Of a stretch of 64,000 bases of DNA, positions 43,547 through 48,636 are shown piece by piece. The notes below the pieces were generated by a model. That model searched no databases, was not told the DNA's origin, and was given only the letters and a program-made list of their open reading frames with translations. A program made the translations under genes and the position numbers. Each line of letters begins with the position of its first letter. Position 1 is the first letter of the stretch. Location: positions 62,001-126,000 of the IMG/VR virus record IMGVR_UViG_3300028920_000022; one strand, given 5' to 3'.

Positions 43547-44056
43547 ATGGAAGGCACCAAATTAGATCTAAAGCGCGCTCAAATTGATGGGGACAATTAC
43601 GGTCCTTCTGATGTCTATACAGACAAAGTAGAATGTGTGCCTTTTGCACTAGCCGCTTTGATTATCATGTATGTGGAAGACGAAAAAGGTGGACCAAACA
43701 AACTCAAAGAATCAATTGAATGGCGAATGAGAAGTGCCTTGGAAGACAAGGATGAATTTTCCAGGGATAGTAGCAAACTGTGGGCAACAGCTGAGGAACG
43801 AATACTGCAGTTGTATAAGTGGTGGACCGTAGAGCGTCCTAAGTTGATGAATCGTGAAAGTGAATTGTTGGAAAAATGGTCTAAGTCTAGAGGTTTGGAA
43901 GACACATCAGATCTGGAAAATAGACTCAATGCTCCAGACACACCTAGAAGCAGAGAGTTGTTCGAAGCACACACGGATCTGGGAGAACGTATTCGTGCTG
44001 AAATGCAAGAGTTTTGTCATGGAGTAATTGATATTAGGGAGTTTCTTTGGACATAA
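43547..44056 (+). CDS. hypothetical phage protein
   Basis: ORF ending FLWT. Confidence 0.65.
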   Translation: MEGTKLDLKRAQIDGDNYGPSDVYTDKVECVPFALAALIIMYVEDEKGGPNKLKESIEWRMRSALEDKDEFSRDSSKLWATAEERILQLYKWWTVERPKLMNRESELLEKWSKSRGLEDTSDLENRLNAPDTPRSRELFEAHTDLGERIRAEMQEFCHGVIDIREFLWT

Positions 44057-44370
44057 TGGCTAAAAAGAAAAGAACAACTTGGTTACGAATTAATCAATGT
44101 AAAAGGTTTGATTGCGGGGGTTTTGATGTAATTATATACGAATACGGCAATCAAATAAGCCGTGATAGAATTGGTAGAAAGCGAAAATATTTAGCACAGT
44201 ATGATTATTACAATTGCAGAGACGAAGATAGGTTAATTATTTATAGTCGGAAATGTGACACAAAAGAACAGGCGCTAACCATGGTTCAAAACAAAATTAA
44301 ACGCTTGGAAAGACTGTTTAGTGTTAAAAAAATAATGAACGAAATGATAATCAAAGATGTCCTCACCTAG
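44056..44370 (+). CDS. tandem paralog 1 with C-terminal IKDVLT motif
   Basis: similar to the next two ORFs. Confidence 0.7.
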   Translation: MAKKKRTTWLRINQCKRFDCGGFDVIIYEYGNQISRDRIGRKRKYLAQYDYYNCRDEDRLIIYSRKCDTKEQALTMVQNKIKRLERLFSVKKIMNEMIIKDVLT

Positions 44371-44653
44371 ATATCATTTAGCAAGTTATAAGAGAGTTTG
44401 GAGTACGAGCACGTATAGTTTACATGTACTGGAATATAAAAACGTTTTACCCAACCAGAAACTTGGCAAAGAAGTTATATATGCTGCAGAGCTAACTTAC
44501 GATTACCAAAAAGATTATATCAATATAATGAGTAGAAGGTTTAACACACCAGAGGCGGCAATAAAATATGTGTTCAAACGCTTGGTTAAAATATCTTCGC
44601 TAAAGCATGACACCGTCATCAAAGAAATGATGATTAAGGACATCATTACGTAA
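44357..44653 (+). CDS. tandem paralog 2 with C-terminal IKDIIT motif
   Basis: similar to neighbours. Confidence 0.7.
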   Translation: MSSPRYHLASYKRVWSTSTYSLHVLEYKNVLPNQKLGKEVIYAAELTYDYQKDYINIMSRRFNTPEAAIKYVFKRLVKISSLKHDTVIKEMMIKDIIT

Positions 44654-44961
44654 TGAGAAAAAAACCTACGAGGTGGGCATTTTACAATTCTGAGTATCAT
44701 TCTGGAAAAGGTTTTTCTCTAATTATAGTTACTTTTGCTAACGTTATTTCTCGAAATAGATTTGGAAAAAAGAGATGTTATTCTGTAAATTATTATGCTG
44801 ATAACAAATCGAAATCGTATATAATAAGAATCCACACTAAAAAATATGACACCAAACACCAAGCTATTACTGCAGTACGTCGCACATTAAACAGATGCGC
44901 TGGTTATTGTGATGCCGACCGTATTCTAAACGAAATGACTATCAGGGATATAATCACATGA
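44653..44961 (+). CDS. tandem paralog 3 with C-terminal IRDIIT motif
   Basis: similar to neighbours. Confidence 0.7.
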   Translation: MRKKPTRWAFYNSEYHSGKGFSLIIVTFANVISRNRFGKKRCYSVNYYADNKSKSYIIRIHTKKYDTKHQAITAVRRTLNRCAGYCDADRILNEMTIRDIIT

Positions 44962-45440
44962 GTTTAATTGAAGAGTTTTATACACTGAAAACCACCGATC
45001 ATCGTAATAGAAAACTTTTCGATTATTGGGGCGCAAACGATGAATGGTTAGAAGACACCCATGATTATATTCAATGGATGTTTCCATTACAAGAAGCAAG
45101 TGCATTTAACGTACATGCGCCACTTCTTTCTGAAGAGGATCGTTATAACTGCTTATGGAACGAAAGTGTTTATGATAACTTTTGTAGATCGTTTAATGTT
45201 ATGTGCGGATTTTATGGGTTCTATATAACATATAATAACACCGTAAAGCTGAAACGTTGGGTAACTCCACAAAACCATAACTTTTTGAGGCTGACCCGTA
45301 TACTTAAAAGTAGCATGTTGATGGGCGCGGAGCCACAAGCGCGCTTTTTATTCCGAAAATTAAATGATTTGTATAAAACTCATCACGAAATCATTACCAG
45401 TAAAACGGTGGATTTTTGGAAAGATGCGGTGGGATATTGA
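44958..45440 (+). CDS. OGFr (opioid growth factor receptor) conserved-domain protein
   Basis: LE.THDYIQWMFPL, HN.LRLTRILKS. Confidence 0.85.
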   Translation: MSLIEEFYTLKTTDHRNRKLFDYWGANDEWLEDTHDYIQWMFPLQEASAFNVHAPLLSEEDRYNCLWNESVYDNFCRSFNVMCGFYGFYITYNNTVKLKRWVTPQNHNFLRLTRILKSSMLMGAEPQARFLFRKLNDLYKTHHEIITSKTVDFWKDAVGY

Positions 45441-46003
45441 TGGAACGTGAAAATTACTACCTGTTTGTCATAGATACCGAGCAATATGCTGGCAATTTTG
45501 AAAGACAAATGGCTGCTTATTGCACTGGTGTGGTTGGTGAATGTGAGGTGGGTGATACTGAGGCATATGTTTTCTCACAAGAATGTCCAGAGTTTGTGGA
45601 ACAAATGGAAAACATTATAGCGCATGTTCCAGATGAACACGAATGTCACCGTCCAGTAAGTATTTATGCTACCCCTGGGTGGTGGAATGATGGGTTGGGC
45701 AGTCATTATCTTGACTCTGAGTGGGGAAAACGCTATACTGCCTACAAATATAAAGAGGAAGCCAAGAAACGTAAAATCAAAAGAGGTATCAAAAAACACC
45801 CAGCATATATGAGTGTGGCAATATATTTTTACGATGAAAAACCTCCGAAGTCAATAATTAATCTTATCAAACAAAGAGCTATAATGTTTCCGGAATATTG
45901 GAGGAAAGATAATAAACCTTGGCATGAGGAAATAAAAATAACCGGATTTAGATTGCTCCATGAAGTTGTAACAACTAAACAGGTGTGGGGAGAGAAAATA
46001 TGA
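45440..46003 (+). CDS. hypothetical phage protein
   Basis: ORF. Confidence 0.7.
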   Translation: MERENYYLFVIDTEQYAGNFERQMAAYCTGVVGECEVGDTEAYVFSQECPEFVEQMENIIAHVPDEHECHRPVSIYATPGWWNDGLGSHYLDSEWGKRYTAYKYKEEAKKRKIKRGIKKHPAYMSVAIYFYDEKPPKSIINLIKQRAIMFPEYWRKDNKPWHEEIKITGFRLLHEVVTTKQVWGEKI

Positions 46004-46015
46004 TAGTTTGATTTT

Positions 46016-46086
46016 CCGCCTGTGGGTCGGGTTGACTCAGGAACTCTTATAAGGTTCCCAGCTTGGTTCGAGTCCAAGCAGGCGGA
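46016..46086 (+). tRNA. tRNA-Ile (TAT) with a short, atypical D arm
   Basis: CCGCCTG/CAGGCGG; GAACT-CTTATAA-GGTTC; CTTGG-TTCGAGT-CCAAG. Confidence 0.8.
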
Positions 46087-46131
46087 CAAGGTAATATTTA
46101 GCTTGGTTAATTCACATAAGGAAAAGAAAAT

Positions 46132-46575
46132 ATGAATCGTTTCACGGCTTACGTTGTTGGTGTCTTAGCGTGTATTGCTGGCGGATGTGCGATTGTTGGT
46201 GGAGTTATAGTGCTTTCCTCCCTGCCACCGCCGAAACTGGAAGAAAAACCAAACTGCCTCATATCGCCTATTGCGGTAAAAGACTCCTACCATTCCAACC
46301 TAGTGGTACGCGATAATGAGGTTTATTCGTGCAGCAGGACCGACGATGATAAACAGGTGTTTTGTCAAAAATTGGTTGTTTCTGACACTTGTAAACAACA
46401 TGCTGATGACATAGCGGTAGCTTACGAAAAATCACGCAAAGAAGAGCGTGAATATTATGCGTCTAACAAAAAGAAGGAAACGTTAGAAAAGCAACAACGA
46501 TGGGAAACCATGTTGGATATTTTCGACACACTAGAGGAGTTTAAAAAGCAAAAGCATGAAAAAGTCTCTAAATAA
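46132..46575 (+). CDS. membrane-anchored protein
   Basis: N-terminal TM; AAGGA SD. Confidence 0.65.
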   Translation: MNRFTAYVVGVLACIAGGCAIVGGVIVLSSLPPPKLEEKPNCLISPIAVKDSYHSNLVVRDNEVYSCSRTDDDKQVFCQKLVVSDTCKQHADDIAVAYEKSRKEEREYYASNKKKETLEKQQRWETMLDIFDTLEEFKKQKHEKVSK

Positions 46576-47278
46576 ACTACACTTTCCTGCAGGAACATCA
46601 CGAAAGGATCGTGTCCTATGCTGGGACATGACCAAAATGTATGTTCCTGAAAGTAACGCAGAGGTTGTGGTTGCTTGTTCGGGCGGTATTGATAGTACAG
46701 CTCTGGCGAACGCCGTGGCTCAATGTATCTATCTTGACCACGGAGATTCTATCATAACATTAGCGTATGTTAATCATGGTTTGCGTTCTGAGGTGGATAG
46801 TGAAATTGAACATATTAAGGATTTGTCTGGTAAGCTGTGTGCTGATTATATTATTCTAGATGGGCGAATCGATCCCAACAAACCTGGAATTCAGGAGCGT
46901 GCTCGCAAGAAACGTTATCAATTATTGAACGATTTTTGTCAAGGGCTACCAAAAGTAAGACGACAATACGTGTATCTTCTCACCGCTCACAACGCAAATG
47001 ACCAGGCGGAGACTGTGTTATTTAGAACCATGATGGGGAGAAAACAAACAAAAATTCCCAAGCGAGTACATAAAAGTTGGGGACAGATTTATAGACCTTT
47101 TCTGCGATTTACTCGTCAAGATATTGAAAAATACGCAAAGGTATTCAATTTATCTTGGTGCGAAGACTCTTCCAATGCTACTGATAAATATACAAGAAAT
47201 AAAATTCGTCACCATCTAATTCCTTGGATTGAGTCTAATATCAACCCAAACGTAATTAAATCCATTTCAGGATCATGA
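46556..47278 (+). CDS. tilS: tRNA(Ile)-lysidine synthetase-like protein (catalytic domain only)
   Basis: SGGIDS, NHGLR, AR..RY, TAHNANDQAETVL, RPFL, EDSSN...Y.RN.IRH. Confidence 0.88.
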   Translation: MKKSLNKLHFPAGTSRKDRVLCWDMTKMYVPESNAEVVVACSGGIDSTALANAVAQCIYLDHGDSIITLAYVNHGLRSEVDSEIEHIKDLSGKLCADYIILDGRIDPNKPGIQERARKKRYQLLNDFCQGLPKVRRQYVYLLTAHNANDQAETVLFRTMMGRKQTKIPKRVHKSWGQIYRPFLRFTRQDIEKYAKVFNLSWCEDSSNATDKYTRNKIRHHLIPWIESNINPNVIKSISGS

Positions 47279-47495
47279 CAGAAGTACAGTCAAACACTCT
47301 CGAAGCCACCCTTATGGTTGGTGGTTTTGTGCTTTTGTTGATATTGTTGTTTGGACTCACTTCTGATAATAAAAACCTGTGTAAACAAAAATGTGGCGTG
47401 CATGCAGTAATTGCATGCGATATTGAATACAAAGACAAAGATGTTGTCATTTGCGAATCTGTTTCAGGACAACCAATAATGAAAAACCTTTTCCC

Positions 47496-48104
47496 ATGAA
47501 AAAACCTCCAAACATACAGCTGATTAATCACGGAGAAGAAACTGATTCTCCACCATTTTTAACAGTTAAGCGGGTACGTTTACATGCCGAGTATCCTGAC
47601 GGATCGGTTAGTCCAGAATTTCATCATGATATAGTATTGAGAAAGAAAATAGATGCGGTTGTAATTATAGCTTACTATAGAATAAACCATACACCAATGG
47701 TATATTTGCGTAGCGCAATTCGTCCAGCTATTGCGGATAGGTTTGTAGACGGAGGCAATTTGTGGGAACTGCCCGCTGGTTTAATTGAGGAGGGAGAGTC
47801 TCCGGTTGAGTGTGCAGTACGAGAGTTGAAAGAGGAGCTGGGGTTTGATGCAGAAGAAAAGGATTTCAAACCTGTTGGTCCAATCTCTTATACTTCAGTT
47901 GGAATATGTGCTGAACAATTATACTTTTTAAGCGTAGAGGTAGATCCGTCAAGCCAAAATGTTCCCACAGAGGACGGTTCTGCTTTAGAAAAGGGGGCGG
48001 ATATTATCTCAATGTGTGTGTTCGACATTCTTTGTGCATGCCAGCGTGGTGAAATTAAAGATGCGAAAACCGAAATTGGGATACGGAGAATGAGCTTTCT
48101 GTGA
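47496..48104 (+). CDS. Nudix hydrolase (ADP-ribose pyrophosphatase-like)
   Basis: ELPAGLIEEGESPVECAVRELKEELG; IKDAKT. Confidence 0.88.
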   Translation: MKKPPNIQLINHGEETDSPPFLTVKRVRLHAEYPDGSVSPEFHHDIVLRKKIDAVVIIAYYRINHTPMVYLRSAIRPAIADRFVDGGNLWELPAGLIEEGESPVECAVRELKEELGFDAEEKDFKPVGPISYTSVGICAEQLYFLSVEVDPSSQNVPTEDGSALEKGADIISMCVFDILCACQRGEIKDAKTEIGIRRMSFL

Positions 48105-48352
48105 AAAAGTTTTTGATCAATTTTTTAAACGCCAAGGGTCATAATTGTGAATGTCCAAATCAATACAGTTCGATCGTTTATTCCAAGTGTAAAAATTGTG
48201 GGTGTTTGTTTGAATATGATGGAACGACAGTTCGCTGTTGGGGCGGTTTAATATGTGGCACCTATAATCGTCCTATTTACTCTGAAGTGAAAGAATATTC
48301 AGCTGTTTCGCTTTCTTGCCAAGATATAGTAATTAAGGATATTATTTCTTAA
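48101..48352 (+). CDS. zinc-ribbon protein with C-terminal IKDIIS motif
   Basis: H..CKNCG..CQDIVIKDIIS*. Confidence 0.65.
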   Translation: MKKFLINFLNAKGHNCECPNQYSSIVYSKCKNCGCLFEYDGTTVRCWGGLICGTYNRPIYSEVKEYSAVSLSCQDIVIKDIIS

Positions 48353-48636
48353 TGGAATCCGGAATCAAAAATCCAACTCAGTGGAAATGGCGAGAAGGAC
48401 CATTGCCAAATGTTAATGATGCTCCCGACTTGGTACGGGTAGTGGCGTGGATTCCGTATGACGATCAGACTGCAGGATATTTGGTTGTATTTTGTGCTTT
48501 CACTGGCGAAAGTTTTAAAAAAACCTGGGTGTCCTCAAGCGATTGTTCTTCCTTATTTCCGGAACGTGTAAAGTGCTGGGCGGTTGTTTCCGGTTTAGAA
48601 TTTGAAGAGTGGGCAATTAAGGAAATTATTGAGTAG
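48352..48636 (+). CDS. DUF551-like protein with C-terminal IKEIIE motif
   Basis: W.W...PLP...V.CW; ends EEWAIKEIIE*. Confidence 0.55.
   Translation: MESGIKNPTQWKWREGPLPNVNDAPDLVRVVAWIPYDDQTAGYLVVFCAFTGESFKKTWVSSSDCSSLFPERVKCWAVVSGLEFEEWAIKEIIE

What the first reader, a model, noticed from the sequence alone, without database searches (positions are those of the whole stretch)
46016..47278. tRNA-Ile(UAU) beside a TilS-like enzyme: two AUA-decoding solutions, or a new U34 modification
Seen: a TAT-anticodon tRNA with a very short D loop, one gene upstream of a 240-aa TilS catalytic domain lacking the C-terminal domains. Established: TilS modifies C34 of tRNA-Ile(CAU) to lysidine; tRNA-Ile(UAU) is rare in bacteria and normally makes TilS dispensable. 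Inference: the phage enzyme may modify U34 or this unusual tRNA to prevent AUG misreading, or serve a CAU tRNA elsewhere (host or phage).
Basis: partly seen in the sequence, partly recalled or inferred. Interest (0 to 1): 0.6.

Follow-up and report, generated by a model that had tools for sequence, protein, structure and literature searches.

The report
Phage TilS–tRNA cassette with UAU anticodon
A 459-kb sediment phage carries a gene pair common in phages for reading the rare isoleucine codon AUA (a stripped-down lysidine synthetase TilS plus its own tRNA), but here alone the tRNA has a UAU instead of a CAU anticodon, so the enzyme's usual target base is missing from its partner.

Summary
A 72-nt tRNA gene with a TAT anticodon (46016-46087) lies one ORF upstream of a 240-aa protein (46556-47278) that is a TilS catalytic domain and nothing more.

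The context changes the reading. Phages carry a family of N-domain-only TilS genes tightly coupled to a tRNA(CAU). Among deduplicated loci, 25 of 45 short TilS genes have a same-strand CAT tRNA within 150 nt, against 0 of 47 full-length TilS genes. One such tRNA is 90.5% identical to E. coli tRNA-Ile2.

The window's locus is an ortholog of this cassette (TilS 62%, downstream NUDIX 65% identical to relatives that carry a CAT tRNA). It is the only case with U34. Its tRNA is structurally atypical: Rfam's tRNA model misses it, but a covariance model built here matches it end to end.

The enzyme keeps every family-invariant residue. ATA makes up 32% of the phage's Ile codons.

Most likely the tRNA reads AUA directly, and TilS remains an ordinary C34 lysidine synthetase serving a CAU tRNA elsewhere (the host's, or an odd 86-nt phage CAU tRNA), or was recently orphaned. 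Nothing supports a new U34 modification, though it is not excluded.

The parts
45416..46003 (+). Upstream ORF (195 aa, phrog_23621, function unknown). Its stop lies 12 nt before the tRNA. This is the left border of the variable tRNA slot.
   Evidence: In other metagenomes, contigs of close relatives end or diverge at 45994-45997.
46016..46087 (+). Atypical tRNA gene with anticodon TAT (UAU, reads AUA). It has a perfect 7-bp acceptor stem, a short D arm, a 6-bp anticodon stem GGAACU/GGUUCC, the loop CU-UAU-AA, a 3-nt variable region, a canonical T arm (loop TTCGAGT) and discriminator A. CCA is not encoded.
   Evidence: ARAGORN; MFE cloverleaf with z = -3.5; model R1 31.4 bits, E = 3.5e-6; missed by RF00005; no E. 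coli tRNA match.
46132..46575 (+). ORF of 147 aa with a hydrophobic N-terminus. No Pfam or PHROG hit. It is not homologous to the ORF that occupies this position in relative L008.
46556..47278 (+). tilS-like gene: an N-terminal catalytic domain only (PP-loop SGGIDS at residues 42-47), preceded by about 35 residues that carry a family-conserved basic motif. It lacks CTD1 and CTD2.
   Evidence: PF01171 144 bits and TIGR02432 150.8 bits; PDB alignments to 3a2k, 1ni5, 1wy5 cover the N-domain only; AlphaFold model pLDDT 92.8 with TilS as top Foldseek hits; family alignment A2.
47275..47499 (+). Small ORF (74 aa) with a hydrophobic stretch, overlapping the tilS stop. It is not a split-off TilS C-domain.
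   Evidence: Small ORFs occupy the same position in L010 (93 aa), L009 (88 aa) and L012.
47496..48104 (+). NUDIX hydrolase gene, a conserved downstream neighbour of tilS in this phage clade. The listed ORF begins at 47451; the start at 47496 is my inference, because the similarity to L010's protein begins at residue 16 (M16).
   Evidence: PF00293 52.6 bits; 65% identity, E = 5e-94, to the NUDIX downstream of tilS in L010; also present in L012.

Best explanation
The locus is a diverged copy of a widespread phage cassette for decoding AUA. The cassette pairs a minimal, N-domain-only lysidine synthetase (TilS) with the phage's own tRNA-Ile2(CAU). In this phage the tRNA slot holds a structurally atypical tRNA whose anticodon is UAU.

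Shown here: the cassette and its tight coupling to CAU tRNAs; the orthology of the window's locus; the intact TilS motifs; the phage's heavy ATA usage; and the absence of a phage IleRS or a U34 thiolase.

Inferred: (1) The UAU tRNA is transcribed with the downstream genes, charged by the host IleRS, and reads AUA by direct U34-A pairing without lysidine, as described for M. mobile and for B. subtilis tilS-deletion suppressor strains. (2) The TilS is still an ordinary ATP- and lysine-dependent C34 lysidine synthetase. Its substrate in this phage is therefore not its neighbour but a CAU tRNA elsewhere: the host's tRNA-Ile2, which it would boost during infection, and/or the odd 86-nt phage CAU tRNA. 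Alternatively it has only recently lost its partner. (3) The tRNA slot turns over quickly, because a close relative carries a different tRNA at the same place.
For: Cassette: about 45 N-domain-only TilS proteins (218-277 aa, 36-72% identical) occur on phage contigs of up to 454 kb, followed by a sharp drop to full-length cellular TilS. A same-strand tRNA(CAT) lies within 150 nt in 25 of 45 short-TilS loci and 0 of 47 long-TilS loci, Fisher p = 1.4e-10. All adjacent tRNAs share the loop CU-CAU-AA and A73. L005's adjacent tRNA is 90.5% identical over its full length to E. coli genes annotated tRNA-Ile.

Orthology: relatives with TilS 57-62% identical carry a CAT tRNA upstream (L008, L009, L011). 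The NUDIX gene downstream is 65% identical.

Enzyme intact: all 21 invariant columns are kept, and 9 departures at 73 conserved columns is within the family range of 0-17. The unique H52N falls at a site where active A. aeolicus TilS has Asp. The fold is a TilS N-domain.

Demand: ATA is 32% of Ile codons, 21.8 per 1000, equal to ATG.

tRNA plausibly functional. A viral tRNA (L151) has the identical 6-bp anticodon arm and a 3-nt variable region with CAT.

Slot turnover: a relative's contig in run X2 (11 differing letters plus a 9-letter deletion over about 150 nt of the upstream ORF, and 7 differences in 222 nt further downstream) continues into a different, canonical tRNA start.

Precedent: unmodified U34 tRNA-Ile reads AUA with little AUG misreading (PMC3919564, PMC3575796).
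Against: Rfam's tRNA model does not recognise the tRNA, so it could be decaying.

E. coli-type IleRS charges tRNA-Ile(UAU) poorly (PMC3575796). The host is unknown and the phage has no IleRS.

Organisms that use tRNA-Ile(UAU) characteristically lack tilS (PMC3919564). Retention of an intact tilS beside such a tRNA therefore needs a reason, and I can only infer one.

The only other CAU tRNA in the genome is itself aberrant (86 nt, long extra arm; RF00005 18.4 bits, R1 18.9 bits).

No expression data exist, since no RNA run holds the locus.

How an N-domain-only TilS binds and selects a tRNA is unknown. Described TilS types all have at least CTD1 (PMC11947777).
Confidence: 0.55

Rival explanations
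1. The TAT element is a decaying or non-functional tRNA gene: a former tRNA-Ile2(CAU) that lost C34 and its canonical D arm. In that case TilS works only on the host's tRNA-Ile2 or on the 86-nt phage CAU tRNA.
For: RF00005 does not match it even at E<=10. Its D arm is non-canonical, and it lacks the TAGCTCAGTGGTTAGAGC shared by the other cassette tRNAs. The genome holds several other weak tRNA-like elements.
Against: The acceptor stem (7 bp) and T arm are perfect, with a canonical T loop. The anticodon loop context CU-NAU-AA and A73 are intact. The cloverleaf is the MFE fold with z = -3.5. The element gets a full-length match to model R1 at 31.4 bits. The 6-bp anticodon stem with a 3-nt variable region recurs in another viral tRNA, L151, which suggests a coherent alternative architecture rather than decay.
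Confidence: 0.15
2. The TilS-like enzyme modifies U34 of the adjacent tRNA. It would adenylate C2 and attach lysine or another amine, producing an A-specific wobble base that cannot pair with G.
For: Adjacency and probable co-transcription, with no + strand terminator between the two genes. The window's enzyme has two unique substitutions (V49A, H52N) in the helix after the PP-loop. C2 activation of a pyrimidine is common chemistry in this superfamily, and the thiolases NcsA and TtuA are the next-best structural matches.
Against: Every other cassette examined pairs the enzyme with C34. All invariant residues are kept. Residue 52 is Asp in a bona fide lysidine synthetase. The cysteines are not invariant, so no thiolase-type Fe-S site is indicated. 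HMM scores to thiolase families are no higher than 18.6 bits. The case is a single instance with no comparative support.
Confidence: 0.06
3. TilS is a recently orphaned leftover. After the tRNA was swapped or mutated to UAU, the enzyme has no needed substrate and is kept only because too little time has passed for it to decay.
For: The tRNA slot differs from that of a close relative, so the change may be recent. Organisms that use tRNA-Ile(UAU) normally lack tilS (PMC3919564). The window's TilS has 9 departures at 73 conserved columns, in the upper part of the family range.
Against: The ORF is intact, with all invariant residues and a confident fold. Nine departures is within the range of members that sit beside CAT tRNAs. 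Some short TilS genes, such as those of L001 and L012 and the PA5oct group, have no adjacent tRNA at all, so the enzyme can be useful without a neighbouring partner.
Confidence: 0.12
4. T34 is a sequencing or assembly error, or a minor variant, and the true anticodon is CAT.
For: It is a single-base difference at the decisive position. Only contigs, not raw reads, could be examined.
Against: An independent assembly of the source run (Logan contig, 146 kb, word depth about 24) is identical over the whole 2 kb laid, with 0 differences. The tRNA also differs from the CAT tRNAs throughout its body, not at one base.
Confidence: 0.02

Closest known systems
Bacterial TilS (tRNA-Ile lysidine synthetase): Type I (E. 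coli 1ni5, G. kaustophilus 3a2k) and Type II (A. aeolicus 1wy5/2e89)
   Same: PP-loop SGGxDS. The family-invariant residues lie in stretches shared with solved TilS (HxxxDxxET, RP, DxSN, RNxxR; my reading). TIGR02432 scores above its cut-off. The N-domain fold matches at TMq 0.71-0.78.
   Different: It has neither CTD1 nor CTD2. The literature read here describes every TilS as having at least CTD1 to reach the anticodon stem and elbow (PMC11947777). It adds about 20 extra N-terminal residues with a conserved basic motif. It is 24-27% identical to the solved enzymes.
Phage TilS homologs already noted: Pseudomonas jumbo phages MIJ3 and PA5oct (PMC6892783) and group A pelagimyophages (PMC7029224)
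   Same: They are phage-encoded TilS homologs. PA5oct's is annotated at 612 nt, about 203 aa. In the literature they are reported with function unknown or listed as auxiliary genes.
   Different: They are only about 29% identical to the window's protein. The PA5oct locus has no tRNA within 2.5 kb. The papers found do not describe the tight tilS-tRNA(CAU) coupling or the loss of the C-terminal domains.
Phage-encoded tRNA-Ile2(CAU) of T4-like phages (PMC1524935); lysidine was measured on a vibriophage tRNA(CAU) (reviewed in PMC13191261)
   Same: It is a phage tRNA dedicated to AUA. It has the same anticodon-loop context and A73, and it fits the high ATA usage of an AT-rich phage.
   Different: The window's tRNA has U34 rather than C34, and a non-canonical D arm, anticodon stem and variable region. 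The T4-like phages discussed in that paper rely on host TilS rather than their own.
tRNA-Ile(UAU) decoding in tilS-less bacteria (Mycoplasma mobile, PMC3575796) and in B. subtilis tilS-deletion suppressors (PMC3919564)
   Same: A UAU anticodon reads AUA without lysidine. The A37 and A38 context is retained.
   Different: Those genomes lack tilS; here tilS sits 470 nt away. M. mobile has a co-adapted IleRS and ribosome, whereas this phage encodes no IleRS and its host is unknown.

Membership tests
TilS (tRNA-Ile lysidine synthetase) | PP-loop ATP-pyrophosphatase motif SGGxDS | tested here: met
   SGGIDS at residues 42-47; S42, G44, D46 and S47 are invariant in the family.
TilS (tRNA-Ile lysidine synthetase) | Match to the TilS N-domain equivalog model above its curated cut-off | tested here: met
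   TIGR02432 scores 150.8 bits against a cut-off of 93.6. The thiolase, LarE and GuaA models score no more than 18.6 bits.
TilS (tRNA-Ile lysidine synthetase) | Substrate-binding domain CTD1 (PF09179), present in both Type I and Type II enzymes | tested here: not met
   The protein ends 9 residues after the N-domain alignment. Pfam finds only PF01171. The downstream ORF is a 74-aa protein with no Pfam hit.
TilS (tRNA-Ile lysidine synthetase) | Acceptor-stem-binding domain CTD2 (PF11734), present in Type I enzymes | tested here: not met
   Absent.
TilS (tRNA-Ile lysidine synthetase) | Converts C34 of tRNA-Ile2(CAU) to lysidine using ATP and lysine | not testable with these tools
   Supported only indirectly, by the family's conserved adjacency to CAU tRNAs.
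tRNA (Rfam RF00005) | Score at or above the gathering threshold of 29 bits | tested here: not met
   No match at gathering score, at E<=10 in a 301-nt slice, or genome-wide at E<=10.
tRNA (general cloverleaf) | Acceptor, D, anticodon and T arms with a 7-nt anticodon loop, U33 and a T-loop consensus | tested here: met
   ARAGORN call; MFE cloverleaf with z = -3.5; full-length match to covariance model R1 at 31.4 bits, E = 3.5e-6.
Phage/bacterial tRNA-Ile2 (lysidine-type) | C34 in a CAU anticodon | tested here: not met
   The anticodon is TAT, and the source-run contig is identical.
Phage/bacterial tRNA-Ile2 (lysidine-type) | Loop context C32 U33 . A35 U36 A37 A38, discriminator A73, and position beside a short tilS | tested here: met
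   These positions are invariant in the 19 cassette tRNAs and are shared by the window's tRNA. The synteny is shown.
tRNA-Ile(UAU) system of tilS-less organisms | Absence of tilS, together with an IleRS adapted to the UAU anticodon | tested here: not met
   tilS is present and intact. The phage has no IleRS. The host's IleRS cannot be tested because the host is unknown.
PP-loop tRNA thiolases (NcsA/Ncs6, TtuA, TtcA) | Invariant cysteine triad that binds an Fe-S cluster | tested here: not met
   The family cysteines are only 80%, 93% and 65% conserved. NcsA and TtcA HMMs score 18.6 and 15.4 bits against cut-offs of 500 and 272. The resemblance is in fold only.

The most novel reading that the evidence does not exclude
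The N-domain-only TilS of this phage has shifted or broadened its specificity. It would act on U34 of its atypical neighbour tRNA, adding lysine or a related amine at C2 to give an A-specific, G-rejecting wobble base not yet described.
Probability: 0.06. Interest if true: 0.9.

Novelty: new variant of a known kind. Interest (0 to 1): 0.55.

Why it matters
Three points make this worth a bench test.

1. TilS is described as needing at least one appended domain to hold and select tRNA-Ile2 and to reject tRNA-Met. A sizeable phage family that has only the catalytic domain, usually encoded next to its own tRNA, offers a natural minimal system. It can be used to ask how substrate selection works. 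One possibility is a co-evolved enzyme-tRNA pair, which would also be of use for codon reassignment work on AUA.

2. The coupling itself (25 of 45 short TilS loci against 0 of 47 long ones) is a simple annotation rule. A CAT tRNA beside a short TilS is tRNA-Ile2, not tRNA-Met.

3. The window is the one case found where the two known bacterial solutions for AUA, lysidine on C34 and a bare UAU anticodon, sit in the same cassette. It may be a snapshot of a switch between them. It also allows a direct test of whether a TilS-type enzyme can touch U34.

Tried and rejected
- Recovering the anticodon of the tRNA in the closest relatives failed. The X2 contig shows only its first 17 nt. Its junction sequence and the second tRNA contig of the source sample are not in IMG/VR. 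The 17-nt 5' half also begins a tRNA-Lys in another phage, so it is not diagnostic. A 51-aa query meant to find the short contig returned nothing. The contig of the 72%-identical TilS starts at tilS. The upstream ORF's family has no close full-length relative.
- H52N as a specificity change: rejected, because A. aeolicus TilS has Asp at that site. R23W is shared with relatives that sit beside a CAT tRNA.
- A thiolase-type Fe-S site: rejected, because the cysteines are not invariant.
- A phage IleRS, an MnmA-type thiolase or a second PP-loop enzyme: none found.
- Assigning L151's atypical CAT tRNA as Ile2 by elimination: inconclusive. One of its neighbours resembles E. coli tRNA-Met and the other matches nothing.
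- The L153 element that carries the same anticodon arm with TAT is not callable as a tRNA, even with relaxed ARAGORN settings. No TilS was found in the L151-L153 records.
- TAA recoding suggested by the tRNA(UUA): not supported. The best candidate region is three separate genes.
- Promoter and terminator scans are at chance level.
- The large representative-protein search and the complex prediction were not used, because no claim here depends on them.
Full report
**What is there**

The window is positions 62001-126000 of a single 458,729-bp viral contig with 39.5% G+C. CheckV rates it 100% complete, and it comes from a marine-sediment metagenome.

ARAGORN calls a 72-nt tRNA with anticodon TAT at 46016-46087 on the + strand. 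A 147-aa ORF with a hydrophobic N-terminus and no family match follows at 46132-46575. The 240-aa ORF at 46556-47278 comes next.

**Is the tRNA real?**

It is atypical. Rfam's RF00005 misses it at the gathering score, at E<=10 in a 301-nt slice, and genome-wide at E<=10.

It nevertheless has these features:
- a perfect 7-bp acceptor stem;
- a canonical T arm (loop TTCGAGT);
- a 7-nt anticodon loop CU-UAU-AA closed by a 6-bp stem;
- a 3-nt variable region;
- discriminator A.

The D region is short: 3 bp with a 7-nt loop in ARAGORN's drawing, or a longer helix with the 5-nt loop GGGUU in the minimum-free-energy fold. The cloverleaf is the MFE structure (-31.6 kcal/mol, z = -3.5 against shuffles).

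I built a covariance model from 19 phage tRNA-Ile2 genes. With filters off it matches the element end to end at 31.4 bits (E = 3.5e-6), on a par with the window's Tyr and Leu tRNAs.

Another viral contig (L151) has a tRNA with the identical 19-nt anticodon arm, a 3-nt variable region and an odd D arm, but with CAT. I therefore take the element for a genuine tRNA gene of unusual architecture. The combination of a single connector nucleotide, a 6-bp anticodon stem and a 3-nt variable region recalls known non-canonical tRNAs. That resemblance comes from memory and was not tested.

**What the protein is**

- Pfam PF01171 scores 144 bits, and NCBIfam TIGR02432 (TilS N-domain equivalog) scores 150.8 bits against a cut-off of 93.6. 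Thiolase and other PP-loop models score no more than 18.6 bits.
- The protein aligns to residues 17-215 of the 464-aa G. kaustophilus TilS, and to the N-domains of the E. coli and A. aeolicus enzymes.
- The AlphaFold model (pLDDT 92.8, pTM 0.90) best matches TilS structures at TMq 0.71-0.78, ahead of NcsA and TtuA.
- There is no CTD1 or CTD2. The next ORF is a 74-aa protein with no Pfam hit, not a split-off domain.
- The literature read here describes all TilS enzymes as having at least CTD1 (PMC11947777).

**The decisive context**

A word-index protein search returned about 45 proteins of 218-277 aa that carry only PF01171 and are 36-72% identical to the window's. Several lie on contigs of 420-454 kb. 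After them comes a sharp drop to full-length cellular TilS at E of about 1e-23.

Fetching their contexts showed a tRNA with a CAT anticodon just upstream of the short tilS:
- 6-8 nt upstream in L005, L006 and L007;
- about 95 nt upstream in L011;
- one or two small ORFs upstream in L008 and L009.

Profile-guided scans of viral and metagenome contigs added about 140 loci. After deduplication at 90% identity the tally is as follows.

| TilS ORF length | Loci | Same-strand tRNA(CAT) within 150 nt |
|---|---|---|
| Short (<300 aa) | 45 | 25 |
| Long (≥300 aa) | 47 | 0 |

Fisher's exact test gives p = 1.4e-10.

In a second subfamily of about 205 aa, the tRNA lies 6-44 nt downstream instead. All adjacent tRNAs share C32 U33 C34 A35 U36 A37 A38 and A73. 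L005's is 90.5% identical over its full length to E. coli genes annotated tRNA-Ile, that is, the CAU-anticodon tRNA-Ile2. In 905 kb of fetched DNA there are 87 distinct tRNAs: 41 CAT, 3 GAT and none TAT.

The conserved unit is therefore a short tilS plus tRNA-Ile2(CAU).

**The window belongs to this unit**

Its TilS is 62% identical to that of L008, L009 and L010, and 57% to that of L011. The downstream order (tilS, small ORF, NUDIX) is shared, and the NUDIX protein is 65% identical (E = 5e-94).

The upstream side varies. The ORF between the tRNA and tilS is unrelated to the one in L008. The window's tRNA body differs from all the CAT tRNAs.

In run X2, a contig of a close relative matches the end of the upstream ORF, with 11 differing letters plus a 9-letter deletion over about 150 nt. 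Past position 45997 it runs into a different, canonical tRNA start. The same relative matches 46357-46578 with 7 differences and 46910-47127 with 2. Contigs of a relative in run X4 stop at 45994. The tRNA slot therefore turns over between close relatives. I could not recover the relative's anticodon.

**State of the enzyme**

The window's TilS keeps all 21 family-invariant residues. It departs at 9 of 73 columns that are at least 80% conserved, within the family range of 0-17.
- R23W is shared with P0002 and P0003. P0003 sits beside a CAT tRNA.
- V49A and H52N, in the helix after the PP-loop, are unique to the window.
- The active A. aeolicus TilS has Asp at the site equivalent to residue 52, so this is weak evidence for anything.
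- The family's cysteines are not invariant, so no thiolase-type cluster site is indicated.
- The roughly 35-residue N-terminal extension carries a conserved basic motif, (K/R)D..(K/R)I.(Y/W)P.G.S..DRR.CR. I infer, without a test, that it may replace part of the tRNA grip lost with the C-terminal domains.

- The only other CAU tRNA in the genome is an 86-nt element with a long extra arm and an encoded CCA, at genome positions 396326-396411. It scores weakly on every model: RF00005 18.4 bits, tRNA-Sec 26.8 bits, R1 18.9 bits.
- A class-II CAU tRNA does sit beside a short TilS in L141, so the 86-nt element is a possible substrate.
- The phage encodes no IleRS, no MnmA-type thiolase and no second PP-loop enzyme.
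- ATA accounts for 32% of Ile codons, at 21.8 per 1000, equal to ATG. Demand for AUA decoding is therefore high.

**Interpretation**

The conserved partner of this enzyme family is C34, which argues that the enzyme is a conventional lysidine synthetase. In the window its neighbour offers no C34.

The most economical reading has two parts. First, the UAU tRNA reads AUA directly. Unmodified U34 tRNA-Ile does this with little AUG misreading in M. mobile and in B. subtilis suppressor strains (PMC3575796, PMC3919564). Second, TilS serves CAU tRNAs elsewhere: the host's tRNA-Ile2 and perhaps the 86-nt phage tRNA. Alternatively it was orphaned recently.

Two points weigh against comfort with this reading:
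- Charging of UAU tRNA depends on the type of IleRS (PMC3575796), and the host is unknown.
- Organisms that use tRNA-Ile(UAU) normally lack tilS (PMC3919564).

The rivals are a decaying tRNA, an orphaned enzyme, true U34 modification and a base-call error. They are weighed in the Rival explanations section. None has positive support beyond what is listed there.

**What is known**

- Phage TilS homologs were noted in MIJ3 and PA5oct with function unknown (PMC6892783) and in pelagimyophages (PMC7029224).
- Phage tRNA-Ile2(CAU) genes are long known (PMC1524935).
- Lysidine has been measured on a vibriophage tRNA (reviewed in PMC13191261).
- In the library searched I found no description of the tight tilS-tRNA(CAU) gene coupling, of the N-domain-only architecture as a class, or of a UAU exception. 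PHROGs v4 has no family for this protein. A literature search of this kind cannot prove absence.

**Verdict**

The locus is a new variant of a known kind: a phage AUA-decoding cassette with a minimal TilS, uniquely paired here with a UAU tRNA.

Noticed in passing
Window 44047-44370, 44357-44653, 44653-44961, 48101-48352, 48352-48636; genome-wide, with a dense block on the - strand at genome positions 1.6-48 kb: Sixty-four small ORFs (about 40-165 aa) end in a near-identical C-terminal tail...I(K/R)(D/E)(I/V)(I/L)(E/T/S)-stop, often preceded by C.(D/E). The stop often overlaps the next start. This could be a very large paralogous family or a conserved gene-junction signal.
   Followed up: partly
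Genome complement 451590-451662 (outside the window; L155:391-463): A well-formed tRNA with anticodon UUA, a UAA-suppressor type, scoring 71.5 bits on RF00005. Single in-frame TAA codons between long open stretches are over-represented (25, against 10 TGA and 8 TAG). The best candidate proved to be three separate genes, so no recoding is shown.
   Followed up: partly
Genome 396326-396411 (L154:527-612); also complement 441163-441239 and complement 395707-395784: An 86-nt tRNA-like gene with a CAU anticodon, a 6-bp anticodon stem, a long extra arm and an encoded CCA. It scores weakly on all models. Two further weak tRNA-like elements exist, one with a CTGATAA loop.
   Followed up: partly
L124:3607-3696 and L141:3613-3698: These are other unusual partners of short TilS genes: a 90-nt class-II tRNA with anticodon ACU 10 nt downstream (L124), and a class-II tRNA(CAU) 37 nt downstream (L141).
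   Followed up: no
Window 45994-45997: In two other metagenomes (runs X2 and X4), contigs of close relatives end or diverge exactly at the 5' edge of the tRNA cassette. In the source sample itself, a separate 433-nt contig carries a canonical tRNA with a similar anticodon arm and T arm.
   Followed up: partly
L153:10461-10549: The window tRNA's exact 19-nt anticodon arm, with TAT, occurs inside a tRNA cluster of another viral contig. ARAGORN does not call the element as a tRNA, and model R1 gives it only 8.6 bits.
   Followed up: partly
Genome 204514-205746 (L161:915-2147): A phage-encoded trigger-factor homolog (Trigger_N, FKBP_C and Trigger_C), flanked by a PD-(D/E)XK nuclease and a nucleoside deoxyribosyltransferase-like gene.
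   Followed up: no
Window 44958-45440 and 45416-46003: A 160-aa protein matches the OGFr_N domain (69.7 bits). The 195-aa upstream ORF belongs to phrog_23621, and some of its homologs sit on contigs labelled as DPANN archaeal MAGs.
   Followed up: no
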